A stretch of 61,688 nt of DNA, the filler included, from Basidiobolus meristosporus CBS 931.73 (taxonomy: Eukaryota; Fungi; Basidiobolomycota), in assembly GCA_002104905.1 (NCBI GenBank). It is 4 parts of 4 records of this genome, joined end to end, with 100 filler letters (N's around TTAATTAATTAA, not from the genome) between each part and the next. Parts side by side here need not be neighbours in the genome. Positions count along the whole stretch, not along the records: positions 30,960 to 49,238 come from MCFE01001065.1; 3 more parts are not named here. One strand, given 5' to 3'. Positions 30,960-49,238 of the stretch are shown here, piece by piece; position 1 is the first letter of the stretch; every line of letters starts with the position of its first letter. Made by a program: the position numbers and the translations under genes. Below the pieces are notes generated by a model. It was not told the origin of the DNA, made no database searches, and worked only from the letters and a program-made list of their open reading frames with translations.

Positions 30960-31156
30960 CTCCAAGCAACTCGAGATACACATCGCGAAGAACGGAAAAG
31001 TGACCTTTGGAGCAGTGAGGGCCTCTGCCAGCTAGCACTTTAAATAAGCGTCATAATCACATGACCATTCACTACCAATCAATAAAATGCAACGGTACTT
31101 TATTCAAGCACACAGACAAGTGGTGTTGTTGGAGTGAATGAAAGCCTTGATTCTTA

Positions 31157-31609
31157 CTATTCAGCAACCCCAGTCGCATCCACCATACCCTCCATATCCC
31201 CCGTAGCGTCCATATCTCCACCGACCTCCATAACCACCGTAGCGACCGTAACCTCCTCGTCCCCAGTATCTGCCCCTTCGCCGCCATATCCCCCGTATCT
31301 CCCCCATAGCTGGGCCTCTTCAGGATCGCCCTCCTCTTCCTCGACATCTTGGTCGGCGTCTTGCTTATCCGAGAGAGTCTGATCGAACATATTCCTTGAC
31401 ATCTGGCCGAGAATGCCATCAATATAGTGCCGAATATTCTGCGCATCCTCTTCCTTGTTTGACGAGAACCTCTTCACCACTTGGCCGCTTTGTGGGTTCC
31501 TATCGGAGATGGATGCGCTCGCCATATTTGTGCTTGACACATCCACGGGACTTCCAAAGGCACTGACGGCCATTAGTAAAGCACAAGCTGCGGTAAGTTG
31601 TTTGAACAT
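31157..31609 (-). CDS. Family E prepro-protein: signal peptide, KR site, acidic pro-region. An apparent 1-nt deletion at 31283/31284 hides a Gly/Tyr/Arg/Trp-rich C-terminal peptide ending at TGA 31161-31163
   Basis: MFKQLTAACALLMAVSAFG signal, VVKR, DADQDVEEEEGDPEEA, QLWGRYGGYG. The shifted frame continues RRRGRYWGRGGYGRYGGYGGRWRYGRYGGYGGYGGCDWGC*. Confidence 0.75.
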   Translation of the reverse strand: MFKQLTAACALLMAVSAFGSPVDVSSTNMASASISDRNPQSGQVVKRFSSNKEEDAQNIRHYIDGILGQMSRNMFDQTLSDKQDADQDVEEEEGDPEEAQLWGRYGGYGGEGADTGDEEVTVATVVMEVGGDMDATGDMEGMVDATGVAE

Positions 31610-31647
31610 GGTGAATGTTTAATATTCCAATAAAGCTCAGCACCAGC

Positions 31648-31701
31648 CTTTATATACAGATACAAGATCGAGGTCTTTATATACAGATACAAGATGGAGG
31701 T
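31648..31701. promoter_or_regulatory. 27-bp tandem duplication that doubles the TATA box of the family E gene
   Basis: ctttatatacagatacaagat[c/g]gaggt twice; the minus strand reads TATATAAAG. Confidence 0.6.
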
Positions 31702-33239
31702 TGATTGATATCGCATCTAGGAAGCTTCAGTCAAATAATGTAGTCTATTTCGGAGGCAACCACCGCAGCCAAAGTAAAAACACTCGATTTCCGTCAACAA
31801 CAATACTAGTCGTGGTATAGAGATTTCTATACTATGATAAATGAAAGTGGCAAGTATTTCTCTCATAAACGGAAATGGGTAGAAAACCAGTGAGAGCCTC
31901 AAAAGAGAGCCTCAAAAATTGGCATTTATTTCGCATGATTTAGAGTTGTGGATGATCGCAATATTGGTATTAAGCTTAACAGCATGGTGTATTAAATTAG
32001 CATCCCAAGCAAGCCCTCCAAGTTCCCAGCGACCATAACGTCCTCGTCACCTGTTCACTCTGGTGCGAGCGTCTTCTTCCTACACACCGTTTCCGGGCTT
32101 TGGAGAAGAGATGGACACACTTGCCACAATGGCTGTACCGGAATTTAAAAAGCATTAAAACGATGGAAAAGTGCTTGCACATGGTGAAGACCAAAGGATA
32201 AACGGAGCCTCCTCTTGTGTATCCTTAACGTTGTCAATCCTATACCACCATTTGTCGTTCATCATCAAAAGGCATCACCACCACCTGGCTTCCTTCTTCA
32301 GGAGACGAATGAGTGGGCTACCTATGTGTAACACTCAAAATTCCCTCGAACAAACTAAGAATGCACTCAATATTTATAGCCTCAGTGTAACAGAAACTAC
32401 AACACTTTGTTTACGCCTAGATCGCACTCACCGTATTCTACGTAAGTCTCGCTATGATACTAATGGAAGTGAGCAGGCAAAGCATCCGCGCCACATATGC
32501 AGGCCAACACAAGTCATCCTGGTGTTATTGAACAATACAAGGATCAGCAGTTTCCCCTAAAAAAGAGGTGCTTAGCCCAAAGGCAATTTGGAGTGAATGC
32601 GATACTACGGTATATAGTATAAAATATTCCGCTTCATCATCATGGTAGCTCAGCCTGTCTCTCCTTACAAGCCGGGCTAATTCCCTATAAAATCGCTTGT
32701 AATGCTTACCTTATTCATCAGGCATACACACAAAAGCACTCACAATGCGATTCAATACCGTTTTCTGCTCCTTAGCCATGGCACTGCTAGCCTGCATGTC
32801 AACTTCAGCACAATCCTCCAGTGCGCTACTAAGTATGCCATCAGTATATAACTCAACTAGCCACAACCAGTGAGGCTTACTAACCAAATACTTACAATAT
32901 AGAATTGGTGAATACTCCTGAAGATACCGCACAGCAACTACCATTTTCAGCTGGCTCATGCCAACGCGTGACCTACTGCCAGCATCACCCCGGAATCACC
33001 TAGCACCTGCGCCCAAGCAATCCTGTATCCTTCTCTGCAAGATTGTAACAATCGCAGGAACAGGATTGCTGCTATAACATCCAATCATGGAGAGGTACAT
33101 ATCGCAAAGAACGGAAAAGAAGTGACTGTTGGAGCAGTAAGAATATCTGTTAACTAATGCTCAATAAACCGCATTGTTTAGCCAAAAGATACACATAATG
33201 CTAAAGCGTACAGACTGGTGAACGAAAACCTGGAATATG

Positions 33240-33611
33240 CCTACACATCACTCTGATTATCCAGCAAAAGGTGAATGGAGTGTGTCCACCATAGCCTCCA
33301 TATACACCATAGCAACCATAACGTCCTTGTCCTCTGTATCTCCCCCGCCCACCGTCCATATCTACCCCATAGCTTCAGGATTGCTCTCCTCTTCTTTGAA
33401 TCCTTGGTGGACACCTTGGTGGACACCTTATTTGCCCGAGAGTCTAACGAAACGTATAGAATGTCTTTGATATAGTGCCGAATGTTCTGCGCATCCTCTT
33501 CCTTGTTGGACAAGGACTTCTTCGCCACATGCTCGCTTAGTGGGTCACTACCGGAGATGGATACTACATCCAAACCATCATTAGCAGAGCACGAAAAAGT
33601 TGTCCACTCAT
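33240..33611 (-). pseudogene. Family E paralog, multiple frameshifts
   Basis: NKEEDAQNIRHYI is shared with copy 1, followed by LWGRYG and a shifted RGRYRGQGRYGCYGVYGGYGG. The 3' flank 33080-33200 matches 30960-31030. Confidence 0.85.
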
Positions 33612-35502
33612 TCTGAAAATTTATTGCTTGATCAATTCATCTTTTATCAACGCTGCACCTAGCATTAATACACCAAATATCTGTCTGCCTTCCTTCACAA
33701 TGAACATAGTAAGCTCTGTATGATGCTGAAATAACAGTAAGGTTGACAGACCGATATAAGCATATATGTGCCAAAATCGCTGAACAACCCGCATCCCGTT
33801 ATATAGCACTGGTTAATTACCCCACATTAGCTCGATTCTTCTCTATAACGCAAACTCATAAATCCCTCTTTGTGATAATATTGACTCTACAAGATGTTTA
33901 TTCACTTGCCATAACCATCTTCTAAGCTTAGGATGCGCTAGTTTTAGGTTCAAACACAGCGGCTATCAAGGCTTCACAAGCAGGCGTTCGTTTAGATTCC
34001 TACGCATAACTGGCTCTCCTTTAAACTTTACCATTACCTCGTCATTGTCCATTGTTAGCTCCTGCAACCCATGCGTCACTGAGAATACCTCGCACATGAC
34101 GCTCTATGGATACGGTCCTGGTCTTGCACCATGGTTTGCACAATAGTATCAGGCCATTGTCCTTTTATAGTCCAATATGATCAAATGATGACTTGAACAA
34201 TGTCCCTTTGTTAGAACTGGATTTCTACCATTGTTTATATGGATTGGGGAATGGGAACTGAGTCACCGCTCTGTTAGAGAGGGGCTTACTTGCTATTACG
34301 GTGAGTTGAACGTAAATTGGGAATATTTAATGGGGCATTAGCTTATATGTATGACTAATTGATATGAGTCAAATGATGTAGTACATTCCGGAAACAACCG
34401 CCGCAGTTCACTCGCTCATGGAAATAAACCACCATGCAATCAAGCGAAGAGATTTCAATATTAAATCAAGTTGAGCAAAGGGATTTGGATTGAATGCAAT
34501 ACTATGGTATATCGTACAAAACTCATCACTGCCCGAGAGAATCTGATCAAATGTATCCCTTGAAGGATGTTTGCTCAGTGGGTCCTTAGCAGAGCGCAAG
34601 CTACGGGGAGTTGTCCACGCATTGTGAATATTTATTGCTCGCTTTTTCCTCTTATATTAGATGGCGGTTAATTGACATCGCATCTAGGAAGCTTTACAGA
34701 ACTGATGAGTCTCATCAACACTGCATGTCGCATTCAAACACCAAATGTCTGTCTGTCCTCATTTGAAATGAGTATTAGAGGGAAAGTGCATTGTATGAAT
34801 GCGGATCAATCAACATTTAGCATGACGCTTATATTTACAACTAAGCCATTATCAAGTCTCGTATAACTGGCTTCCCCTCAAATTTGCCACTGCAACCATG
34901 AGGCGAGCATTGTTGTTCTGCAGTAAATGCCACGCTACGATCAGTGTGCAAGATTAGAACTGGATGTTGATAAGGCGCTAGCAAGGCTAGGAGGCTATCA
35001 CATTTAGGTACTCAGATCAGTTAACAGCCCCAACTATACGGAATGGCATTTATTTAGTTTGAATTGGCGACGGATGCGCTTGCTTCATATATGCTCAACA
35101 TATTAGTTTATGCATTGCGGATATGGAATGCTGCTTGGTAAACCTGGAGCTCAAACAATATCCGCCTCTCCCTTTCTCGCCATATCCTTCTTGGAGTTCT
35201 GTTCCTTAGGAGCCAACATCTTCACAGATGCAACTATATCCACAATGTCCTCTATTGCTTCAAGTCCTTGTGCCCAATAAATACTCCCCCTTCTTGCATC
35301 TTCTTTCCTGATGTATTTGGGCTTTTTTTTGCTAAAGTAGAGCAAATGCGGTTCTACAGAGCAAAATTGTAGAATGTTGTAGTGTCTTTGTTGCTTTGAC
35401 ACAGTGATATGTGATGTACTTGGCATCACACTCATATGAGCTATTTAACCAAGACCCGCTGTTTCTTTAGGTCACATACACACCACTGTTTGCAACACAT
35501 CC

Positions 35503-36609
35503 ATGCCCACGACTCCACTTTCTTCCGAGATATCTAAGCTGCTTATTGCACTACAGAATGTCTCTGATAGGGATCAGCTATTTGAGCTCCTCCGCGTCTT
35601 CATTGGCCTCCTTTTACGTGAAAAAGGCTTTGTGGATATTATACTGCGGGATTGTTTTCTGTCAGCTTTGCTATCTGATGGGATCCGGAAAGATGATGAT
35701 ATATCTACACCACCCCCAACTACACGATCTCTTATGAAAGGCAAAGAACCTTTGCTAACATCACCCTCATCGCCAGTACCTTGTACTCAACCTCTCCCCT
35801 TCCAAGCCAATTCCTCCCTAGCACATTGTGCCCAAGCACTCCCCTCCCAAGCCAACTCCCCGCTGTTCCATCATACTCAAGCTCCCCCCTCCCAAGCTAA
35901 TTCCTTGCTTGAACATTGTACTCAAGCTGCCCCCTCCCAAGCCAATTCCTTGCCGTCAAATAATTGTCAGGTAAAATGTGGTGCTAATCACTTCCTTCAG
36001 AAGTTGGCAGCAACAATCAAGCTTCATCAGGACTCTCCAAAGGATCTGAATCTAATTGCAGATCTTGATCCTTCCGAGCATTTTCAAGAAATACTCAATA
36101 GCCAACCTGCTTTGCCAGTGGTCCAGATTTCCAGGCTGAGCAATTCTGTGGAGCAGCTGAACGGTCTTGGAGAACTGGCCCTAATTCTGTCTAACATCCA
36201 CCTTTATCGGCTTGCAAGTATTTATGTTGACTTTTGTAGGGGTCAAATTGCTGATAACCCAAGTTGGAGATGTTTGACCCGTATTGGTATTACCAGAAAG
36301 CTCCGCTCAGCCTTATGCGTGCAAGCCGCTGCATGCCATCAGCCACTTAACTACTCAGCTGTAAAGGCAAACCTAGAGAGAGGAGCATCTCTATATTGTC
36401 TTGCCAGCTTCTTGGGTCTTTTGGTTTTATAGTATACTGATACAGTAACCGCAAGAAGAATTAGCGAGCTGTCTCCTGGATGCTGGGAGCTGGTGATTCA
36501 GTATCTAGTTGACAACCCTGACACAAGGGGCTGCTTTGGTGAAAATGAGCAATATGAGCATCTTAACACTCGGCAGCTCTTTGTTTTTGAGAACTACTAT
36601 CTATTATAG
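35503..36609 (+). pseudogene. Unknown protein with four 15-aa tandem repeats, probably TE-associated. A TAG at 36430 is followed by 58 more open codons
   Basis: 45-bp repeats at 35782-35960 (CTQPLPFQANSSLAH-type). The frame stays open from 36433 to TAG 36607-36609. Confidence 0.45.
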
Positions 36610-36887
36610 CTGTATTCAATAAATACCGTCAAGTGCTCTATGCAGCATATTGTCAGAACCAACCACACTAACATCATGGAATACAGGCCAAGTACTGTAG
36701 CTTTGCACTTATCATGCAAGATTACACATATATTAGTTTGTTTCAGAGTAAAATGCCGCCACTATTGACAAGTATTTTATATCCTTGTAAGTCTTGCCTC
36801 TGTAGATAAAGCCTCTATACTCTATGTATTATTCAATTGCATGTGGACTTCTGTATGTTCTTAGTCCCTAATAAAAACTAAATAAAA

Positions 36888-39800
36888 TGCCAGCATAATG
36901 CCATCATAATATCAGCTGAATTCCAAATTAATCAAAACTGACAGTTATCAATATCTCATGCACCAGCTATTGAGCAGATTAGCAACCATATTTTCCAGAA
37001 GGAGACTAGGCCAACCAACATCTATGCCAAGTTTGGTAATTAGCTGATCACTATGTTGACCAAAAATTGTAACATAATATTTGAACATGAAACACTGTGT
37101 GAATACCAGCAGAATACAAGCTGAAAATCAGATGAATTCCTAGTTTGTGATCTTTCATAGGGAGTATTGAGGCTTAGATAATAATAATGCATGTGAGTTA
37201 TGGAGTAAGTTCCTTGGATCTTACACATTTGGCAGCGATACTGCCCATTGTGCCCACAATATCCAGCTATCTTGCTGATGGCCATGGTATCTCCAAAGCA
37301 GATAACAATATGTGCATTAACTTGATGACCATTTACTAGAATTTCACTGGATAGCTTGCATCCTATTGTGGTGAAGTCTGACAAGTTGAGTGCCTTGCAA
37401 AGGTGGCATTCTCATCAGTGTGTGCCATCAACTGTGTGCACATGCTGGTATCAGGAGGATTTTTAGATCATATGTTGACAGGTGCATTACAGTTGTCCAT
37501 CTGTACCAGGCACATGGTAAGTTGCATCCCAAAATGATTTTAGCTAGAAGTAGTAGTAAATCCTCAAAGCCCCCATTACTCATATTGGGGGAAATGTGCC
37601 ACCTCTCTAGCATTTATATCACTTCATTCACCAGTAAATGGATTAATGGGGTCACTTGGCTCCATTGAGTATACTCTGCATTTTGTTCAATAGCTGTTTT
37701 CTCAACACATATTGGGCTCTTACCAGTCTCATGCAGGGTAAAGTTGTGAGGAGAAGTGGGCTTAGAATATATCAGAGAGCCTTCTTCAGAGCTATCACCA
37801 TATGGGCCATATTTGGAAGGCTAAGGTGAGCTGGAAGGTTGCACAGACTTGCCTGACTTATTTTTGGCAAATTGGCACAAGCAGCCAGATGCTGTAATAG
37901 AAGTATGAAGAGGCTGGCAAGACATTTTAGGTGATATAGTGACTGATGAATGTTTATACATGGCTTGTATGGAAAAACACTGGCAGTGATCTTGGTAATA
38001 TTTCCTGTGCTGTCTATGTGCCCCATGGCTGAGGGGCTTATTGTAATAACCACACAGTCTTTTTTCGCTACTCTTGGGGTGTTTTATCAGTGTAATCTTG
38101 TCCATGAGCCAAGTGGCTTGATATTTGACAATGTATTGCTGTTGTATCACTTTCTTGTCAATATTCATGAAAGTCAAGACAGTCATCTATATGAGATATT
38201 GAATCTACATGAATGTAAGATTAAATCATGACTCACAATGCTAATCATTATAAATAAAGTTGTGGCACCACATACCCACATATATGTAGTACTACATCCT
38301 CTTTGGTTTGACTTGCATCATATATATGCAGAAAAAAAATAACCTAACTTTGACTGGTCCCCAACCAACCACAGTGCAGACAGCAGCATAAGAATGGTTA
38401 GACAACAGCTTGCTGCAATGTTTAGTGCAGCAAGTGGAGCCACATCCAAAAAAATCTGCATTGAAAGTGTACTCACTGAAGATAATGATACAGACTCCTC
38501 AGCCTCTCAGTCAACTAGGCACTTGGAAATATCTGGGGAGCCGCAAGCTGACTATAAAGCTCAGGCAGATGGGAGTGTTGCAAATGGAGTATCACTGGTA
38601 GAAGACTGGCAAATGACCATCATGACTACAGCGCCACTGGTACTTGCAAGTATATTATCAGCCTATATCAAAGCATTGAGAGGTGCTTGTGGCAAGTGGC
38701 TAATAGAATAGATGCAATGGCCCAGAGAAATCAGGAAACAGTTCAGGGACAGGATGAGTGGATACTGGGTGTAGAGCAATCAATATCCCAGGTAGAGAAT
38801 GCAGTATTGTTGCCGCAAAGAAGGAACTTAAGCAGCTGTATGATATAGATCAGAATTGAGCTATTTCTTGAAATAGCAGCAGTGGAAAATCACTCCATTT
38901 CTAATGCACAACAACAATGCCTGAAGATAAGGCCCAGAGAAAAGCCTTTCTCAGCATGGGAGGGAGAGACTGTGAGAAACATACCAAAGATTCAATATCA
39001 AAAAACACTGAAAAGCCATCAGGCCATTGAATGCAATGATAATGAGTGGGCACATATTCAAGAGGCCATCAGAAATACTGCATGCACTCATCTAAAGGCT
39101 GGCACACCTAAGGTTTTCAGGAACTATAGGACAGGCAGAGAGCACTTGACCTCCCCCATGAGCATTGTCCTGGACTCAAATAATCAAACAGATCTTGGGG
39201 CAGCACTGAGATGCTAAGAAGATATATAAGAATAGTAGAAACTATCCAGGGCAGAAGAACAATGGAGCCATGGCTAAAAAACAGCAACTTCCTCATGAGC
39301 CCATAGTAAGCAGGACTGAAAGCTTGAAACAAGTGGTAAAAAAGTGTCAAGTTGCTAGAACAGTGCTGTTAAGGGGAAAATAGGCAGAAACAAATACACC
39401 AATGCAGTACTTATCAAGGAAATAGCATGGTACACTACAGAAAGTACTCAGTCAAAGTAGCAGCAAAGAACCTGGCAGTGGTGCAGTGAAAGAAAAAGGG
39501 AAAGTAAAGAAGTTCTACCCAAGCCAGCAGCCAAGAAGTGTGAGGAACAATCTGCAGTTCTCACCAATTGACAACAACAACTTAGAACAGTCTGAAGCTT
39601 GGAGTAGCCAAGAATAATTAGCAACAAGATAACAGCGGTTTTAACAAGAGCTGAAAGCACAGCCAGTTGAACTACTCTCCAGTGAGGTAGATGTGCTTGT
39701 AGAGAAAGGCAATTTGTCTACCATAGCTTTCACAACCTCCACAGCCTCAGTTATATTCACAGTGGAGATCCTACTGGCAAGCAAAGCAACAATGTGAGGA

Positions 39801-40376
39801 AGTCTTAAAAAAGGATGAAAGTACATATGTATATTACAAGGAATTTTTACAAAGACTGGCAGTACAGTGCTGAACTTTCTATAGCTGGCTGAAGACCAGA
39901 ATGTTTGAAAACCAGTGAACAAGCAATGGCACAAAGCCATAGGGTACCTGTCAAAGTCATGGCCAAAGGGTGTCAAGGCAGAGACCCTTATTGAATGGAG
40001 TACTTTAATGGGGGTACTTGCTGTGTGTGAGGTAAGGCTCAGTGTTAGTGCTGGGTATAGGCACTTATATAGGTCAGAACCATATCAAGAAGCTCAAAGT
40101 TGGAATTCATCTGATTTTTAGCTGGTAATCAACTGGCATTATATTTACATATTGCTGGTATTCTACCAGTATATCCCCTTCAAATTGTCAATTGGAATTT
40201 TTAAGCTGGATAGCAGGCAGCTGATTACCAAGTTTAGTGCAAATGCAGGTTGGTGTAGTCATCACCTGGAGAATATGCCTGCATATCTACCTGACAGCTA
40301 GTACCTGATGTGTTGAGAGTGGCCATTTTTGAAAAACTTAGAATTCAGCTGATATTATGATGACATTCAGCTGGCC
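36888..40376 (-). mobile_element. Decayed CMC/EnSpm(CACTA)-like DNA transposon with about 55-bp terminal inverted repeats
   Basis: The inverted repeat gccagc..aatg.catcataatatcagctgaattc occurs at about 36889-36945 and 40321-40375. Tnp2-like fragments GDTMAISKIAGYCGHNGQYRCQMC (37040-37384) and WHISPNMSNGGFEDLLLLLAKIILGCNLP (37428-37613). Confidence 0.6.
39450..39740. repeat. About 290-bp diverged repeat, present in inverted orientation at 43560-43855
   Basis: gctgttatcttgttg...ttcttggcta...ttcagactgttctaag matches on opposite strands. Confidence 0.75.
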
Positions 40377-41037
40377 TGTTGTTGACTTTTCTTCTTAAGC
40401 AGTATAATCTACAATTTACCTACTTCAGACAATTCAACAGAGATAAACTAATTTGTATGCATGAAAAGTAAGTGGAGTGGTGGACTTTGTAATCAAGAAG
40501 TGTGAAGTGAGGCAATAGCCAATCAATATACACAAACAGACAAATTGATTGAGTGTCTGGGATCAGAAAGTGAGAGAAATGGCAAGGAACTAATTGAAAG
40601 CCACTTGTGAACCAATGAAATAAAAATATTTAGCTAAGCTTTTTGTGCAATGTGAAGTGCAATATTATTTGCACAGTTTTTGCATGGTGTCCTGACGGCA
40701 TCAGTACCTCTTGGTCACAGGATATAAATCTTGAGATGGCCTTCTGATGAGATCATCACAATTTATATCATAGTGCTTAGCATCTATAAGTGAGAATTGC
40801 CAGAGATTAGGATGTACTTCACAGGTACTTTTAAGCATCCATTTTAGACTTGTTCTGATGGATAATGCCACACCATATGATACCATAGGCTGCCAATGGC
40901 ACACAGCAGACCTAAATCTGGCCACAGACTGTAAAATATAACTGTACATATTCATACAAGGTAGCCTCTGTGCTTCACCCATTGTTTTAGAGAAAATCTA
41001 CTTTTTGACCTTTTTTTAGGGATGAAATTGTGCAAGA

Positions 41038-41350
41038 TGTCCACAAGTGAGATAGAAATGAAGGCATGCATCTGATATTCAATACCCATGGAACTCTAAC
41101 TCTAACTTTAGGGGGTTTAAGCATGCCATAAAAATGGATGGCACTATCTTAGTCCACTGGTACTATCTGGCACTTTAAAGGCTTCAGATTAAATTTACCA
41201 TAAGGATAATATTCAAGTATAGTACTGGATAGTACCAGTGGACCAAGATAGAGCTATCCATTTTTATAACATGCTTAAACTCCATGCAGCAAGAATTAGA
41301 GTTCTATGAGTATCAAATGCTTGCCTTCATTTCTTTTGCACTTCTGAGCA
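41038..41350. mobile_element. Fold-back MITE-like element, 313 bp, with about 130-bp inverted arms
   Basis: The left arm gaaatgaaggca.gcat.tgata...tttaagcatg..ataaaaatggat.gc.ctatctt.gtccactggtactatc is mirrored on the right. No TSD resolved. Confidence 0.8.
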
Positions 41351-43859
41351 CCATGAATAACATTGACCCCAGAAAATGGTCAAAAGATGAACTTTCTACA
41401 GCACAATAGGTGTAACACATGGGCTGCTATTTGTAAAGATGTGCAATTCTAACTCACAATCTATGGCAAAGTTTAGGATTGATTCATGTCTTTGGCACAT
41501 GGTGGCACTATTTGACACTATCACACAGAGCAATATTGTTCACATCAATCAAACAGCAATTTACACAAAAACATACAGCTCAGTTATTGATTGCCATTTT
41601 CACTTTGAGCATCCACTAGCAGCTGTCAGAGAAAAAGATTGCCCACCTGACCAAAACAACGTTGTTATTCAACGCTATTAGATCAGTGATCATTGCTATT
41701 TTGGTGCCAGCATCAGCTGGCTGCAGCTAGGCAGTTACATTGCTTACATTACTATGGCATCACTGCAATATGAGCTATTAGCTCATATACTTATCACCAT
41801 TTTTGTTACAGCTGGTTACATTGCTCACATGGCTATCACATTATGATCTGAAGCTATTAGCTTGATTGTTCATTAACATTTGTGGTGTTGGCATTAACTG
41901 GCAGCAGTTAGATAAGTCCATTTTTCACATGACTTCAGCAAGATAACAATCTAAAACTACTGCCTCTGTTATCTATTTTCATACTTGGTGTGAGCATTCA
42001 CTGGCTGCCACCAGGCTTTACATTGCTCATATGACCAGAGAAACAGTATATTATGGGACAATTAGATCAAGAAATATCTTGCCATTTTTGGTGAGAGCAT
42101 CCACTAGCTGCTGCCAGACAAATCTACCAATCACATGGCTCAATCAGCAAAATATTCCAAAATTTGCATATCAGTTTTATAGAGGACTTGTTCCATTGTA
42201 CCCTGGCAGCGTGTGTGGCATGACACATGGTCTAAAAGAATAACTGGGTGCATTATTATAATAATTAATAGGCAAAATCATTCTTGGACAATATTGCACT
42301 ATGTGGGACAATCATGCACATAATGCAACAATCTGACACAATAAGGATGGCATGGATGATTACACTAGTCCATAATAGCCATCCCACATTTGCAATCCAA
42401 TACCACCATGATAGCAGGTATAAGAAGGTATATGGATATATTTCTTTTGAAATAATTAGGAATCCACCTGATTATTAATGTATTGTGAACTAGTACTTAG
42501 TTGAAAAGTGTACTTCAGATTGTTCACTTAGAAATTAGTTTATAATGTATATGCTAATTATTCAGAATTAATGAAGTACATAATCTTAAGAAAATTTGAA
42601 ACTTGTCCAAATGAGCTGATACTTGGCACATGTACTCCTGAGAACCTCCAATAATGACCAAATTGCTATATTTACGTAGTCCTGCAATAAGTATAATACT
42701 GTGTTGCAACTCAATAAAGTAGCAAGCAATTAACAGGTAAACCTTCTAATTCTCCAATTCACTTCCAATATATCTATCTAATATTTCAACAGTTTCTGCA
42801 GCATAAAAGGAAATATATGCATATCACACTATAAACCATACTGATACTTAACACTTTGGTTACCCTCATTCTAATTAGATGAAGTGTCAAAGTAGGATTG
42901 GCTTAAAAGTATCATAAAGCTTTAAGCCCCAATTGGTCTAATGGCAAATATGCAGGCTACCTGATTTGCTGTCAAATATCCCATCTCTCCTATTAAGCAA
43001 ACAATTCATAGAACCTAATGATTGGACCAGATGTGATGGTTGCATGTGAATAGTTAGGCAGATGCAAAACAGACCAAATAGCTGCACTGGTGTTGCAGAT
43101 GATGTAGTAATATGCCAGGTGTGTATTTTTAGGGGTAAGTTTCAGGTGTGAGACTACTAAGATATTACTCTTATCTACACCCTATAGACAATGTGAAGAT
43201 CATGTATAATGGCCTTAACAAAATCTTAATCCCATGACCAGGAGGTATTGATGCCATCAGGTCACTGTGCCAAAAATGTTGGAAATAGGTTGCACCTCAA
43301 ATTGTGCAAAACAATTAGTCAAATTTTCTCATTTCTACAGTTCCTAACTTACTTTTGATTGGTTCTTTGTCATTTGTATCACTTTCTACAATACTTCCTT
43401 GCAATATGCAAGTGTATTGCTGTCATTACTGCTTTTGAAAAGGTGCTGCAACACCCTGGTGTGCTTATTGGAGATCCAAAACTCCACTCTAGGTGTTGCA
43501 ATAATCCTCATACTCCTTCAAGCTTGTGCTTTTCTTACAGTGAGATATTCACTCTATGTACAACCAAGGCAGTAGTAGATAAACTGCCTTTGTCTGCAAG
43601 CTCATCTACTTAGCTGGAGTGTAGGTCAACTGGCTGCAATTTAAGCTCTTGGGAAAGAAGCTGTTATCTTGTTGAAGATTCTTCTTGGCTATTACAGTAT
43701 TCAGACTGTTCTAAGCTGACATCATTAATTTGTAAGAGCTGCAGCTTGTTTCTCACATGTCTCTGCCACTGGCTTGGGTGGACTTTTTTTCCTTTCCCTT
43801 TCTCCTTCATTGTACTACTGTCAGGTCTTCACTGCTACTTCTGCTGAGTGCATCTTGTA

Positions 43860-46800
43860 TTGTACTACATTTTTCCACAGACATGTAACTGAATTTCAGC
43901 ATGTGAATCTTCTTTCTCACAGCAGCCACTGGTTGCTCACTGGCATGTGACTGACAACCATGTTGCTAATTTTTAATTTGACAGCAGCCACTTGTTGCCT
44001 GTGGACATGTGACCAACAAACATGATTCTAATTTAATGTAACAGCAGCTACTTGTTGCTCACAGACATGTGACTAAAAACATACACATTGATGATCAGGC
44101 TAACAGCAGCTACCAAATGCCCACAAATATGTGACTGAATGTCAGAATGCCAAATTCCTTACTGACATGTGACTGAATTCCAGCATGCCAATTTTCTTTC
44201 TAACGGCTGCCACTGGTTGCTCACAGGCATGTGACTGACAATCATAATGCTAATTTTTAATCTGACAGCAGCTACTGGTTGCTTACAGACATGTGACTTA
44301 AAATCATTATGCTAAATTTAATCTGACAGCAGCCACTTGTTGCCCACAGACATGTGACTAAAAACCATCAGAATATTGATCAGGCTGACAGCAGCCACCG
44401 GTTGCCCACAGACATGTGACTGAATTTCAGCATGCTAATTTTCTTTGCGACAGCAGCCACTGGTTGCCCACAGACATGTGACGGAATTTTGGTCTGCCAG
44501 TTTTGTCACTAACAACAGCCACTGGTTGCCCTGAGACATGTGACTGAATTTCAGCATGCTATTTTTCTCTGTGATAGCAGCCACTGGTTGCCACATACAT
44601 GTGTTTGAATTTCAGATTGCCAGGTTTTACTGACAGCAGCCACTGGTTGCCCACAGACATGTGACTGAATTTCAGCATGCTAATTTTCTTACTGACAGCA
44701 GCCACTGGTTGCCCACAGACATGTGACTGAATTTCAGCATGCTAACTTCTTTCTGAGCAGCAGCCACTGGTTGCCCACAGACATGTGACTGAATTTCAGC
44801 ATGCTAATTTTCTTACTGACAGCAGCCACTGGTTGCCCACAGACATGTGACTGAATTTCAGCATGCTAACTTTCTTTCTGAGAGCAGCCACTGGTTGCCA
44901 CAGACATGTGACTGAATTTCAGCATGCTAATTTTCTTACTGACAGCAGCCACTGGTTGCCCACAGACATGTGACTGAATTTCAGCATGCTAACTTTCTTT
45001 CTGAGAGCAGCCACTGGTTGCCCACAGACATGTGACTGAATTTCAGCATGCTAATTTTCTTACTGACAGCAGCCACTGGTTGCCCACAGACATGTGACTG
45101 AATTTCAGCATGCTAATTTTCTTTCTGAGAGCAGCCACTGGTTGCCCACAGACATGTGACTGAATTTCAGCTTGCTAATTTTCTTACTGACAGCGCCACT
45201 GTTGCCCACAGACATGTGACTGAATTTCTGCTTGCCAGTTTTCTTATCGCGCACCCTGGTTCCACAGACATGTACTGAATTTCAGCTTGCCAGTTTTCTT
45301 ACTGACAGCAGCCACTGGTTGCCCACAGACATGTGACTGAATTTCAGCATGCTAATTTTCTTTCTGAGAGCATCCACTGCTGGCCACAGACATGTGACTG
45401 AACTTCAGCTTTCCAGTTTTCTTACTGACAGCAGCCACTGGTTGCCCTGAGACATGTGACTGAATTTTGGCTTGCCAGTTTCTACTGACAGCAGCCACTG
45501 GTTGCCCACAGACATGTGACTGAATTTCAGCATGCTGATTTTCTTTGCGACAGCAGCCACTGGTTGCCCACAGACATGTGACTGAATTTTGGTCTGCCAG
45601 TTTTGTCACTAACAACAGCCGCTGGTTGCCCTGAGACATGTGACTGAATTTCAGCATGCTAATTTTGTCTGTGATAGCAGCCACTGGTTGCCCACATACA
45701 TGTGATTGAATTTCAACTTGCCAGGTTTTACTGACAGCAGCCACCGGTTGCCCACAGACATGTGACTGAATTTCAGCATGCTAACTTTCTTTCTGAGAGC
45801 AACCACTGGTTGCCCACAGACATGTGACTGAATTTCAGCTTGCCAGTTTTCTTACTGACAGCAGCCACTGGTTGCCCACATTCATGTGACTGAATTTCAG
45901 CATGCTAATTCTCTTTATGAGAGCAGCCACTGGTTGCCCACAGACATGTGACTGAATTTCAGCATGATAATTTGTCTTACTGACAGCAGCCACTGGTTGC
46001 CCACAGACATGTGATTTCAGCATGCTAACTTTCTTTCTGAGAGTAGCCACTGGTTGCCCACAGTCATGTGACTGAACTTCAGCATGCTAATTTTCTTTCT
46101 GAGAGCAGCCACTGGTTGCCCACAGACATGTTACTGAATTTCAGCTTGCCAGTTTTCTTACTGACAGCAGCCACTTGTTGCCCACAGACATGTGACTACA
46201 AGCCATCAGAATATTGATCATACTGACAGCAGCCACTGGTTGCCCACAGACATGTGACTGAATTTCAGCATGCTAATTTTCTTTCCGACAGCAGCCACTG
46301 GTTGCCCACAGACATGTGACTGAATTTCAGCATGCTAATATTCTATCTGAGAGCAGCCACTGGTTGCCCACAGACATATTACTGAATTTCAGCTTGCCAG
46401 TTTTCTTACTGACAGCAGCCACTGGTTGCCCACAGACATGTGACTGAATTTCAGCTTTCCAGTTTTCCTACTGACAGCAGCCACTGGTTGCCCTGAGACA
46501 TGTGACTGAATTTTGGCTTGCCAGTTTTTACTGACAGCAGCCACTGGTTGCCCACAGACATGTGACTGAATTTCAGCATGCTAATTTTCTTTGCGACAGC
46601 AGCCACTGGTTGCCCACAGACATGTGACTGAATTTTGGTCAGCCAGTTTTGTCACTAACAACAGCCGCTGGTTGCCCTGAGACATGTGACTGAATTTCAG
46701 CATGCTAATTTTCTCTGTGATAGCAGCCACTGGTTGCCCACATACATGTGATTGAATTTCAGCTTGCCAGGTTTTACTGACAGCAGCCACCGGTTGCCCA

Positions 46801-49238
46801 CAGACATGAGACTGAATTTCAGCATGCTAATTTTCTTACTGACAGCAGCCACTGGTTGCCCACAGACATGTGATTGAATTTCAGCATGCTAATATTCTAT
46901 CTGAGAGCAGCCACTGGTTGCCCACAGACATGTTACTGAATTTCAGCTTGCCAGTTTTCTTACTGACAGCAGCCACTGGTTGCCCACAGACATGTGACTG
47001 AATTTCAGCATGCTAATATTCTATCTGAGAGCAGCCACTGATGCCCACAGACATGTTACTGAATTTCAGCTTGCCAGTTTTCTTACTGAAAGCAGCCACT
47101 GGTTGCCCACAGTCATGTGACTGAATTTCAGCATGCTAATTTTCTTTATGAGAGCAGCCACTGGTTGCCCACAGACATGTGACTGAATTTCAGCTTGCCA
47201 GTTTTCTTACCAACAGCAGCCACTGGTTGCCCACAGGCATGTGACTGAATTTCAGCATGCTAATTTTCTTTATGAGAGCAGCCACTGGTTGCCCACAGAC
47301 ATGTGACTGAATTTCAGCTTGCCAGTTTTCTTACCGACAGCAGCCACTGGTTGCCCACAGGCATGTGACTGAATTTCAGCATGCTAATTTTCTTACTGTC
47401 AGCAGCCACTGGTTGCCCACATACATGTGACTGAATTTCTGCTTGCCAGTTTTCTTACTGACAGCAGCCACTGGTTGCCCACAGGCATGTGACTGAATTA
47501 CAGCATGCTAATTTTCTTTGCGACAGCAGCCACTGGTTGCCCACAGACATGTGACTGAATTTCTGCTTGCCAGTTTTCTTACTGACAGCAGCCACTCGTT
47601 GCCCACAGGCATGTGACTGAATTTCAGCATGCTAATTTTCTTTCTGAGAGCATCCACTGGTTGCCCACAGACATGTGACTGAATTTCTGCTTTCCAGTTT
47701 TCTTACTGACAGCAGCCACTGGTTGGCCCTGAGACAGGTGACTGAATTTTGGCTTGCCAGTTTTTACTGACAGCAGCCACTGGTTGCCCACAGACATGTG
47801 ACTGAATTTCAGCATGCTAATTTTCTTTGCAACAGCAGCCACTGGTTGCCACAGACATGTGACTGAATTTTGGTCTGCCAGTTTTGTCACTAACAACAGC
47901 CGCTGGTTGCACTGAGACATGTGACTGAATTTCAGCATGCTAAATTTCTCTGTCATAGCAGCCACTGGTTGCGTACATACATGTGATTGTATTTCAGCTT
48001 GCCAGGTTTTACTGACAGCAGCCACCGGTTGCCCACCAACATGTGACTGAATTTCAGCATGCTAATTTTCTTACTGACAGCAGCCACTGGTTGCCCACAG
48101 ACATGTGACTGAATTTCAGCTTGCCAGTTTTCTTACCGACAGCAGCCACTGGTTGCCCACAGTCATGTGACCAAATTTCAGCTTGTTTTCTTACTGACAG
48201 CAGCCACTGTTGCCCTGAGACAGGTGACTGAATTTTGGCTTGCCAGTTTTTACTGACCAGCAGCCACTGGTTGCCCACAGACATGTGACTGAATTTCAGC
48301 ATGCTAATTTTCTTTATGAGAGCAGCCACTGGTTGCCCAACAGAACATGTGACTGAATTCAGCATGATAATTTGTCCTTACTGATAGCAGCCACTGGTTG
48401 CCCACAGACATGTGACTGAATTTCGGCTGCCAGTTTTACTGACAGCAGCCACTGGTTGCCCACAGACATGTGACTGAATTTCAGCATTGCTAATATCTTA
48501 TCTGAGAGCAGCCACCTGTTGCCCCAGACATGTGACTGAAATCAGCATGCTAATTTTCTTACTGACAGCAGCCACTGGTTGCCCACAGACATGTGACTGA
48601 ATTTCAGCTTGCCAGTTTTTACTGACAGCAGCCACTGGTTGCCCACAGACATGTGACTGAATTTCCGCATGCTAATTTTCTTTCTGAGGGCAGCCACTGG
48701 TTGCCCGCAGACATGTGACTGAAATTCAGCATGCTAATTTTCTTACTGACAGCAGCCACTGGTTGCCCACAGACATGTGACTGAATTTCAGCTTGCCAGT
48801 TTTTACTGACAGCAGCCACTGGTTGCCCACAGACATGTGACTGAATTTCGCATGCTAATTTTCTTTCTGAGGGCAGCCACTGGTTGCCCACAGACATGTG
48901 ACTGAATTTCAGCATGCTAACTTTCTTTCTGAGAGCAGCCACTGGTTGCCCACAGACATGTGACTGAACTTTCAGCTTGCCAGTTTTCTTACTGACAGCA
49001 GCCACTGGTTGCCCACAGACATGTGACTGAATTTCAGGATGCTAACTTTCTTTCTGAGAGCAGCCACTGGTTGCCCACAGACATGTGACTGAATTTCAGC
49101 TTGCCAGTTTTCTCACTGACAGCAGCCACTGGTTGCCCACAGACATGTGACTGAACTTCAGCATGCTAATTTTCTTTCTGAGAGCAGCCACTGGTTGCCC
49201 ACAGACATGTTACTGAATTTCAGCTTGCCAGTTTTCTT
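43860..49238. repeat. Satellite array, about 62-bp unit, roughly 85-90 copies, with higher-order variants; runs into the gap
   Basis: Consensus ctgacagcagccactggttgcccacagacatgtgactgaatttcagcatgctaattttctta. The period was measured from cactgg at 44641, 44703, 44765, 44827 and 44889. Confidence 0.97.

What the first reader, a model, noticed from the sequence alone, without database searches (positions are those of the whole stretch)
31157..31609. Hidden Gly/Tyr/Arg/Trp-rich cationic peptide behind a one-base frameshift in a prepro-protein
Seen: the ORF track ends in an acidic tail. Restoring one base between 31283 and 31284 instead gives QLWGRYGGYGRRRGRYWGRGGYGRYGGYGGRWRYGRYGGYGGYGGCDWGC* after a signal peptide, a KR site and a strongly acidic spacer. 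The paralog at 33240-33611 has the missing base (TAT GGA CGG vs TAT GG- CGG). Known: an acidic propiece plus a cationic mature peptide is a standard AMP precursor design, and YGG-rich peptides are antimicrobial in C. elegans (NLP-29/caenacin type). Kex2 cleaves after KR. Inference: an undescribed glycine-rich AMP or cell-wall peptide family, with this copy either recently disabled or mis-assembled.
Basis: partly seen in the sequence, partly recalled or inferred. Interest (0 to 1): 0.75.

Follow-up and report, generated by a model that had tools for sequence, protein, structure and literature searches.

The report
Broken copy of fungal GYR-peptide gene
This is a copy, broken by one missing base, of a small secreted protein gene from the fungus Basidiobolus; dozens of intact sister genes in that genome show that the hidden glycine/tyrosine/arginine-rich tail is the real coding frame, but what these peptides do has not been tested.

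Summary
On the minus strand, 31609-31157 encodes a signal peptide, an acidic region and the start of a Gly/Tyr/Arg/Trp tail. The frame then slips at a Gly codon that has only two bases (31285-31284). The other frame runs on for 40 codons to ...CDWGC and a stop.

Read through with X at the break, the product is 149 aa. [quoted passage not shown] Twenty-nine sequences I retrieved end in CDWGC. Between its two subfamilies the 49-aa tail is 92% identical and the acidic region 44%. Tail indels among the intact members are in frame. So the GYR frame is the selected one, and the annotated acidic tail is a frameshift artefact.

Relatives exist only in Basidiobolus. B. ranarum models lack the tail, and a sister group carries (GRW)n tails. 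No Pfam or NCBIfam family matches, and I found no paper describing it.

The KR site is not conserved and does not lie next to the tail. An antimicrobial role is plausible (about 35%) but untested. I could not tell a real mutation from a PacBio assembly error. The window's second copy and a third remnant are clearly dead.

The parts
31157..31609 (-). Copy 1: the whole broken gene. The 150-aa ORF as annotated follows frame A to an out-of-frame acidic tail.
   Evidence: (P0001)
31550..31609 (-). Signal-peptide-like N-terminus (aa 1-20, MFKQLTAACALLMAVSAFGS)
   Evidence: Hydrophobicity profile; aligned with the N-termini of the intact paralogs. No signal-peptide predictor was available.
31310..31549 (-). 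Acidic pro-region or N-domain (aa 21-100, net charge -11). It contains a predicted helix at about aa 52-80 and the EEEEGDPEEAQ spacer.
31469..31474 (-). It is not conserved in subfamily B.
31286..31309 (-). First 8 residues of the cationic tail (LWGRYGGY), still in frame A
31284..31285 (-). The break: a Gly codon with only two bases (GG). From here the reading frame slips.
31161..31283 (-). Rest of the Gly/Tyr/Arg/Trp tail in frame B: 40 codons, RRRGRYWG...GGCDWGC, plus the TGA stop at 31163-31161
31648..31701 (-). 27-nt tandem duplication carrying TATATAAAG-like boxes, 40-90 nt upstream of the ATG (promoter-like)
33240..33611 (-). Copy 2: a degenerate paralog. ATG at 33611, stop at 33566-33564 after 15 codons, several indels, tail split over two frames, no CDWGC end.
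34587..34707 (-). Remnant 3: only the upstream region and the first ~12 codons of a further copy
   Evidence: (repeat D3)

Best explanation
SHOWN. The locus is a member of subfamily A of a Basidiobolus-specific family of small secreted proteins. Members have a signal peptide, an acidic N-part of 70-80 aa, a conserved junction ...PEEA[E/Q]-LWGRY, and a 49-aa tail that is 43% Gly, 20% Tyr, 20% Arg and 8% Trp, carries net +7 to +9, and ends in CDWGC. In this copy one base is missing from the codon of Gly109 (31285-31284). The annotated ORF therefore runs into a meaningless acidic tail. The true tail frame stays open, and its 40 frame-B residues differ at two positions from the closest intact paralog. 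The GYR frame is the one under selection.

NOT DECIDABLE HERE. The missing base may be a recent real mutation (about 55%). This short array is decaying: copy 2, remnant 3 and the neighbouring gene are all broken. Or it may be an indel error of the PacBio assembly (about 45%).

INFERRED mechanism (about 35% likely, the likeliest single option). The protein enters the secretory pathway. The acidic N-part neutralises and chaperones the strongly cationic, aromatic, disordered tail. The tail is released at or near the conserved EEA[E/Q]/LWGR junction by a protease that is not Kex2. The free Arg/Tyr/Trp/Gly peptide, perhaps closed by a Cys145-Cys149 disulfide, then acts on the envelopes of competing microbes in dung, litter or the animal gut. 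The high gene number would serve dosage.
For: Frame break and collinearity. The X read-through is 149 aa, gap-free, and 94% identical to P0012 and P0016.

Family size and source. Clusters of 28 and 11 members, all from B. meristosporus CBS 931.73, often several per scaffold, with subfamily A and B accessions consecutive. Twenty-nine retrieved sequences end in CDWGC.

Selection on the tail frame:
- The tail is 92% identical between subfamilies, against 44% for the pro-region and 36% for the signal peptide.
- Tail indels in the complete members are 3 or 6 residues long, so they keep the frame; the partial model P0008 lacks 10 tail residues.

Charge complementarity: pro-region -7 to -11, tail +7 to +9.

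A sister group in the same genome keeps the acidic spacer and the junction (...PEEAELWGR) but carries (GRW)n tails. The shared theme is therefore a cationic, aromatic, Gly-rich tail and not one exact sequence.

The tail is predicted to be disordered.

YGGYG-repeat peptides of the C. elegans nlp-29 cluster include NLP-31, which is antifungal in vitro (PMC11112505).

The genome was sequenced with PacBio (PMC7466969).
Against: There are no functional, expression or peptide data.

The tail is nearly invariant among the paralogs. Many antimicrobial peptide families instead vary most in the mature peptide (my own knowledge). Gene conversion could also homogenise a repetitive tail.

No recognisable processing site lies at the junction. 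The KR site is far upstream and not conserved.

The three B. ranarum homologs are annotated without any GYR tail. The N-part may therefore have a function of its own, or their gene models may be incomplete.

No codon-level test was done.
Confidence: 0.8

Rival explanations
1. The family makes a secreted material, not an antibiotic. The Gly/Tyr/Arg/Trp tail drives phase separation through cation-pi contacts and may later be cross-linked through tyrosines. It would contribute to an adhesive (Basidiobolus capilliconidia carry a sticky tip; my own knowledge) or to a spore or hyphal wall layer. The acidic block would keep it soluble until release, or form a self-coacervating two-block polyampholyte.
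For: The composition matches the grammar of phase-separating glycine-rich adhesives, such as the tick cement GRP (bioRxiv 10.1101/2023.03.27.534361 / PMC11794139). The tail is predicted to be disordered. Dozens of near-identical genes suggest bulk production. Low variation in the tail fits a material better than an arms-race peptide. The (GRW)n variants use the same Arg-aromatic grammar.
Against: At 49 residues the tail is short for a structural protein. Charge-matched acidic propieces are typical of toxic cationic peptides (my own knowledge). There are no wall-anchor signals and no neighbouring oxidase, tyrosinase or peroxidase ORF in the 18-kb piece (ORF-level scan only). No localisation data exist.
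Confidence: 0.2
2. The tail is a polyprotein of short bioactive signals. Cleavage after Arg, by fungal processing enzymes or by host gut trypsins, would release peptides that begin with Tyr-Gly-Gly (YGGYGR, YGGYGGR, YGGYGGYGGCDWGC). These would act on receptors of the fungus itself (pheromone-like) or of its animal hosts (neuropeptide- or opioid-like).
For: Five of the ten Arg residues are followed by Tyr, so an in-silico cut after Arg yields YGG-initial peptides. YGGYG peptides of C. elegans (NLP-24 and the nlp-29 cluster) are reported to act on opioid-type receptors (PMC11112505). Exact sequence conservation fits receptor recognition. Basidiobolus is described as an amphibian gut symbiont (title of PMC7466969); that it also passes through insects is my own knowledge.
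Against: This rests purely on pattern. The sister group with (GRW)n tails shares the precursor design but has no YGG units. No receptor or processing evidence exists.
Confidence: 0.06
3. It is a RiPP or Kex2-processed repeat precursor (KEP). The Tyr/Trp-rich core would be cut out at dibasic sites and cross-linked by dedicated enzymes, as in ustiloxin-type peptides.
For: B. meristosporus CBS 931.73 was reported as the fungus with the most KEPs, 43 (PMC7329392). UniRef labels two family members 'RSAM-associated Gly-rich repeat protein'. Subfamily A has RRR inside the tail.
Against: There are no repeated core peptides flanked by KR/RR, and the dibasic sites are not conserved between subfamilies. 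The family members scanned (P0002, P0011, P0019) have no NCBIfam hit at E <= 1, and the window's own ORF has only a chance-level one (E 0.38), so the RSAM label is not reproduced. None of the ORFs I scanned in the piece (11 long ORFs and one exon of the neighbouring gene) matches DUF3328, tyrosinase or a radical-SAM family. The KEP paper's supplement text held here lists no ORX accessions, so membership in their set could not be checked.
Confidence: 0.04
4. The annotated 150-aa protein with the acidic C-terminus is the real product of this locus, and the GYR frame is a by-product of composition.
For: The ORF is open and was called as a gene (P0001). Ten gene models of the family also end in the same acidic frame. 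All three frames of this G-rich repeat are open.
Against: Most of those models reach the acidic frame by other shifts. Many read the spacer as a basic RKRRAILKRPSYGG stretch, lack the signal peptide, or do both, so they are heterogeneous. At least 29 sequences use the GYR frame and end at the same CDWGC stop. The tail is the best conserved part at protein level and the complete members carry in-frame indels. Copy 1 is collinear with the intact genes apart from one missing base.
Confidence: 0.03

Closest known systems
Intact paralogs in Basidiobolus meristosporus CBS 931.73: ORX78405.1/ORX90180.1 (P0012), ORX91092.1 (P0016), ORX73481.1 (P0002); subfamily B: ORX84462.1 (P0011). All are named 'hypothetical protein'.
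   Same: True homologs. They are 149 aa, gap-free against the X read-through and 89-94% identical (subfamily A). They share the signal peptide, the acidic region, the junction and the CDWGC end.
   Different: They are in one frame. The window's copy lacks one base in the Gly109 codon, and its tail differs from the best matches at two positions, one of which also occurs in other paralogs.
(GRW)n-tailed sister group in the same genome (ORX90058.1 P0047, ORX65005.1 P0043, P0056)
   Same: Signal peptide, acidic spacer, and the same junction ...PEEAELWGR followed by a cationic aromatic Gly-rich tail.
   Different: They are longer (157-213 aa), have a different N-part, and carry tails of WGRGR repeats with no Tyr and no CDWGC.
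C. elegans nlp-29 cluster (NLP-27 to NLP-31, NLP-34) and caenacin-type YGGYG peptides
   Same: Secreted Gly/Tyr/Arg(/Trp)-rich peptides with YGGYG units, encoded by clustered paralogs. NLP-31 is antifungal in vitro (PMC11112505).
   Different: No detectable homology: the profile search of 1.84 billion representatives found no nematode hit at E <= 1e-3. The nematode precursors are short and lack the long acidic N-part (my own knowledge). They also lack the CDWGC end. The likeness is one of composition and is probably convergent.
Antimicrobial peptide precursors with an anionic propiece, such as mammalian alpha-defensins (my own knowledge)
   Same: Signal peptide, then a charge-balancing acidic propiece, then a strongly cationic C-terminal peptide (charges).
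   Different: Here the fold is unrelated, the tail is disordered, no processing site is known, and no activity has been shown.
Tick cement glycine-rich protein (phase-separating adhesive)
   Same: A secreted, disordered protein rich in Gly, Tyr and Arg, in which Arg-aromatic contacts drive condensation (10.1101/2023.03.27.534361).
   Different: No homology. The tick protein has no acidic N-block. The Basidiobolus tail is much shorter.
Fungal Kex2-processed repeat proteins (KEPs)
   Same: Small secreted fungal precursors. B. meristosporus is the richest species in the survey (PMC7329392).
   Different: There are no tandem core peptides bounded by dibasic sites, and the single KR is not conserved.

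Membership tests
Basidiobolus GYR-tail secreted protein family (unnamed; ORX73481.1-like) | Significant sequence similarity over the N-part (signal peptide plus acidic region) | tested here: met
   phmmer E 3e-56 to P0002; tblastn puts P0002 residues 1-109 at 88% identity in frame -2
Basidiobolus GYR-tail secreted protein family (unnamed; ORX73481.1-like) | Conserved junction PEEA[E/Q]-LWGRY and a 49-aa Gly/Tyr/Arg/Trp tail ending in CDWGC followed by a stop | tested here: met
   Both are present, the tail being split over two frames. The 40 frame-B residues differ at two positions from the best matches P0012 and P0016
Basidiobolus GYR-tail secreted protein family (unnamed; ORX73481.1-like) | One uninterrupted reading frame | tested here: not met
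   One base is missing in the Gly109 codon at 31285-31284. This is a broken or mis-assembled member.
Kex2-processed precursor / KEP | Dibasic (KR/RR) sites that flank the released peptide(s) and are conserved in the family; tandem core repeats | tested here: not met
   KR/KK at residues 46-47 occurs only in subfamily A, and subfamily B has TQ/TR. No dibasic site lies at the spacer/tail junction. There are no flanked repeats
Nematode NLP-29/caenacin YGGYG peptides | Homology to the nematode precursors | tested here: not met
   The profile search gave 15 hits at E <= 1e-3, none from a nematode. The non-Basidiobolus hits I looked up are low-complexity matches: an insect suex-1-like protein and unnamed metagenome or run-assembly proteins. 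The weakest hit, P0048, was not looked up
Nematode NLP-29/caenacin YGGYG peptides | YGGYG repeat units in a secreted peptide | tested here: met
   The tail has six YGG units and several YGGYG units. This is a resemblance in composition only.
Cationic antimicrobial peptide precursor with an anionic propiece | Signal peptide, acidic propiece and cationic C-terminal peptide with matching charges | tested here: met
   Pro-region -7 to -11, tail +7 to +9. The signal peptide was judged by hydrophobicity only.
Cationic antimicrobial peptide precursor with an anionic propiece | Proteolytic release and antimicrobial activity of the mature peptide | not testable with these tools
   This needs peptidomics and MIC assays.
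RSAM-associated Gly-rich repeat protein (UniRef label on two members) | Match to the NCBIfam model above its cut-off | tested here: not met
   P0002, P0011 and P0019 have no NCBIfam hit at E <= 1; P0001 has only a chance-level hit to an unrelated model (streptophobe, E 0.38, 9.5 bits against a cut-off of 60)
Dikaritin/ustiloxin-type fungal RiPP | Neighbouring DUF3328 (UstYa) or tyrosinase genes | tested here: not met
   No such Pfam hit in the 11 long ORFs and one exon of the neighbouring gene scanned in the 18-kb piece. This is a limited test: ORFs only, and introns were ignored.

The most novel reading that the evidence does not exclude
The amplified family encodes host-directed or animal-directed bioactive peptides. 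Cleavage after Arg, for example by gut trypsins of the insects, amphibians or reptiles that carry Basidiobolus, would free Tyr-Gly-Gly-initial peptides (YGGYGR, YGGYGGR, YGGYGGYGGCDWGC). These would mimic YGGYG/enkephalin-type neuropeptides and modulate the host gut or host behaviour. That would be a fungal gut symbiont making opioid-like peptides from a ribosomal polyprotein.
Probability: 0.05. Interest if true: 0.85.

Novelty: new variant of a known kind. Interest (0 to 1): 0.45.

Why it matters
For annotation: the deposited 150-aa model of this locus, and about ten sister models, carry a frameshift-derived acidic tail and should be flagged as pseudogenes or assembly errors.

For biology: ribosomal antimicrobial peptides known from fungi are mostly cysteine-stabilised, such as defensin-like and AFP-type peptides (my own knowledge). 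The searches here found no description of a linear Gly/Tyr/Arg/Trp peptide family in any fungus. This one sits behind an acidic N-part and is amplified to dozens of near-identical genes in a fungus described as an amphibian gut symbiont. A sister group carries natural (GRW)n tails.

If the peptides are active, they would be a convergent counterpart of the nematode NLP-29/caenacin peptides and a source of short, easily synthesised cationic peptides. If they are adhesive or wall material, they would be a fungal example of Arg-aromatic condensate chemistry. Either way the hypothesis can be tested directly with a 49-residue synthetic peptide and the existing RNA-seq data.

Tried and rejected
- Intron hypothesis: rejected. 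The X read-through is collinear and gap-free with the intact 149-aa paralogs, and the two frames share base 31283, so exactly one base is missing.
- The window's copy 2 as an intact reference: rejected. It has an early stop and several indels.
- Pfam on P0001, the frame-B ORF, copy 2, P0002, P0011 and P0019: only chance-level hits.
- NCBIfam: nothing.
- PDB sequence search: only a DnaJ Gly-rich stretch at E 0.25.
- AlphaFold2 with the family alignment: mean pLDDT 46.6, with only the signal helix and a helix at 52-80. No fold search was justified.
- ESM Atlas: a 0.83 lead to an oomycete 'glycine-rich protein' cluster for the whole protein, and nothing for the tail. Neither is usable.
- Metagenome contig scan with the family alignment: 67 pattern matches, none a relative.
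- Rfam on the whole piece: no match.
- Literature: 'Basidiobolus' with 'glycine-rich' or 'antimicrobial peptide' gave nothing on this family. The text held here of the KEP paper's supplements lists no ORX accessions, so I could not check whether the family is among its 43 KEPs.
No paralog or B. ranarum DNA could be fetched, and no codon-level (dN/dS) test or check for a missed tail exon was possible.
- The UniRef label 'RxLR effector protein' on a B. ranarum homolog: the sequence has no RxLR motif.
The broken codon was represented by X only.

Full report
**What is there**

The piece (30960-49238) is eukaryotic, about 35-47% G+C in 1-kb windows, with fungal-type introns. On the minus strand an ATG at 31609 opens a 150-aa ORF that ends at 31157. 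It reads as:
- a hydrophobic signal-peptide-like start (MFKQLTAACALLMAVSAFG/SP);
- a region with K46-R47;
- a strongly acidic stretch (...DQDVEEEEGDPEEAQ);
- LWGRYGGYGG;
- and then an acidic tail.

A second frame (31307-31161) reads ...RRRGRYWGRGGYGRYGGYGGRWRYGRYGGYGGYGGCDWGC and then a stop.

**Is the frame change real?**

A word search with the ORF found only proteins of Basidiobolus meristosporus CBS 931.73. The window's own product (P0001) is on record from a contig of 18,279 bases, which is the length of this piece. The window is therefore almost certainly a scaffold of that assembly.

P0002 (149 aa) and P0011 (139 aa) carry, in one frame, the N-part followed by the Gly/Tyr/Arg/Trp tail. 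tblastn of P0002 against the piece puts residues 1-109 in frame -2 (31609-31283) and residues 103-149 in frame -1 (31304-31164), joint E 1.6e-78.

At the codon level:
- Tyr108 is 31288-31286.
- The next Gly codon has only the two bases GG (31285-31284).
- CGG at 31283-31281 starts the Arg run.

The product is 108 + X + 40 = 149 residues. It aligns without a single gap to the intact 149-aa paralogs and is 94% identical to P0012 and P0016. This excludes an intron. Exactly one base is missing.

**The family**

Cluster look-ups show 28 sequences within 90% of P0002 (subfamily A, mostly 149 aa). A further 11 lie within 90% of P0011, plus P0039 (subfamily B, 139 aa). All are from the same genome, often several on one scaffold. 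Consecutive accession numbers alternate between A and B types, which indicates tandem arrays.

Twenty-nine of the sequences I retrieved end in CDWGC.

In the alignment the 49-aa tail is nearly invariant. Between subfamilies the identities are 36% for the signal peptide, 44% for the acidic region and 92% for the tail. The tail indels in the complete members remove 3 or 6 residues, so they keep the frame; the partial model P0008 lacks 10 tail residues. The GYR frame is therefore the frame under selection. Gene conversion may add to the uniformity.

Ten gene models end in the acidic frame instead. They are heterogeneous. Most read the spacer in the same shifted frame, as a basic RKRRAILKRPSYGG stretch. 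Many also start at an internal Met without a signal peptide. They look like pseudogenes or indel-bearing copies and not like an alternative product. All three frames of this G-rich repeat happen to be open, which explains why gene callers accept them.

**Range**

A profile of 22 intact members was scored against 1.84 billion representative proteins. It gave only 15 hits at E <= 1e-3. The real relatives are all Basidiobolus.
- *Further B. meristosporus members.*
- *B. ranarum.* One protein, KAK9693938.1 (P0042), matches over the N-part only. Its two paralogs (P0053, P0054) also end in a short acidic stretch with no GYR tail.
- *A sister group in B. meristosporus* (P0043, P0047, P0055, P0056). 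It keeps an acidic spacer and the same junction ...PEEAELWGR, but continues with WGRGR repeats.

Of the rest, those I looked up are low-complexity look-alikes, such as an insect 'suex-1-like' protein; the weakest hit, P0048, I did not look up. A metagenome scan found no relative. Pfam, NCBIfam, the PDB and the ESM Atlas add nothing. AlphaFold2 predicts only the signal helix and one helix at residues 52-80, with the tail disordered (mean pLDDT 46.6).

**Surroundings**

Copy 1 has a duplicated TATA-like box 40-90 nt upstream.

About 2 kb away lies copy 2 (33611-33240, minus strand). It has a stop after 15 codons, several indels, a tail split over two frames, and no CDWGC.

A third remnant, with only the upstream region and about 12 codons, lies at 34707-34587.

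Each copy is paired tail-to-tail with another small gene that has a signal peptide. That gene runs on the plus strand from 32745 to 33157, has an intron at 32833-32902, and is itself frame-broken. The end of a paralog of it sits at 30960-31035. So a two-gene unit was duplicated and is decaying here.

None of the ORFs I scanned in the piece, 11 long ORFs and one exon of that neighbouring gene, matches a tailoring enzyme, protease or oxidase. The contig ends in a satellite of more than 80 copies of a 62-bp unit.

**Real mutation or assembly error?**

This cannot be settled here. The genome was sequenced with PacBio (PMC7466969), and single-base deletions are the usual residual error of such assemblies (my own knowledge). 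Against that, this small array is visibly degenerating, and the family contains many other broken copies. I put it at about 55% real and 45% error.

**How it probably works**

Shown: a secretion-type N-terminus; an acidic N-part of net -7 to -11; a conserved junction; and a disordered tail of net +7 to +9 that is 43% Gly, 20% Tyr, 20% Arg and 8% Trp, with two Cys four residues apart at the very end.

Inferred: the acidic part masks the cationic tail until release, and the freed peptide acts on microbial envelopes. This is the design of many cationic antimicrobial peptide precursors (my own knowledge). The composition matches the YGGYG peptides of the C. elegans nlp-29 cluster, one of which is antifungal (PMC11112505). 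The (GRW)n sister group points the same way, because the conserved theme is Arg plus aromatic plus Gly and not one exact sequence.

I give this reading about 35%. Points against it:
KR lies before the acidic spacer, not between spacer and tail. It is TQ or TR in subfamily B. The junction EEA[E/Q]/LWGR has no basic pair.
- The tail is nearly invariant. Many antimicrobial families vary most in the mature peptide.
- The B. ranarum models lack the tail.

Rival readings:
- a phase-separating adhesive or wall material, like the tick cement glycine-rich protein: about 20%;
- short YGG-initial signal peptides released by cleavage after Arg: about 6%;
- a RiPP or KEP precursor: about 4%;
- the annotated acidic product being real: about 3%.

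**Safety note**

B. meristosporus has been isolated from a human eye (PMC7466969). Nothing indicates that this gene is a toxin or an effector. An automatic UniRef label, 'RxLR effector protein', on one B. ranarum homolog is not backed by any RxLR motif. I nevertheless kept the break as X throughout and give no restored sequence.

**Verdict**

It is wrong about the Kex2 logic and about the local paralog. The function remains untested. The locus itself is an ordinary broken copy. The family it reveals is an undescribed, genus-restricted and highly amplified set of NLP-29-like cationic peptide genes. It is moderately interesting and easy to test.

Noticed in passing
window 44164-49238 (also 43919-44082): A satellite of at least 82 copies of a 62-bp unit (83% matches) runs to the end of the contig. 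The ORFs listed there on the minus strand are just translations of the repeat.
   Followed up: partly
window 32745-33157 (+) and 30960-31035 (+): A second small gene with a signal-peptide-like start (MRFNTVFCSLAMALLACMSTSAQ) and a canonical fungal intron (32833-32902, GTATGC...CTAAC...TAG) lies tail-to-tail with copy 2. Its frame breaks near 33001. The last ~25 codons of a paralog lie tail-to-tail with copy 1 at the edge of the piece. The two-gene unit was duplicated with a spacing of about 2.05-2.12 kb. No Pfam match.
   Followed up: partly
window 34587-34707 (-): A third remnant of the GYR-peptide gene: a 54-nt upstream block 80% identical to 31687-31740, plus a degenerate ATG and signal-peptide start. 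Nothing further of the gene follows downstream.
   Followed up: yes
window 35503-36432 (+): A 309-aa ORF with four 45-nt repeats (35770-35950) that encode Pro/Ser/Gln-rich units (...PSQANS...). No Pfam match, and I did not check for homologs.
   Followed up: no
proteins P0043, P0047, P0055, P0056 (B. meristosporus, other scaffolds): A sister family has natural (WGRGR)n tails behind the same ...PEEAELWGR junction. P0055 shows the same kind of frame slip within its tail.
   Followed up: partly
proteins P0042, P0053, P0054 (Basidiobolus ranarum): Homologs of the N-part only are annotated. They end in an acidic stretch with no GYR tail. Either the tail was gained in the B. meristosporus lineage or lost in B. 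ranarum, or the gene models miss it. The DNA could not be fetched.
   Followed up: no
window 37040-37384 (-): This ORF has a Cys/His-rich stretch (...GYCGHNGQYRCQMCKIQG...) that recalls transposase zinc-binding regions, but no Pfam family is significant (best E 0.15). The 36-41 kb region looks like degraded repeat or transposon sequence.
   Followed up: partly
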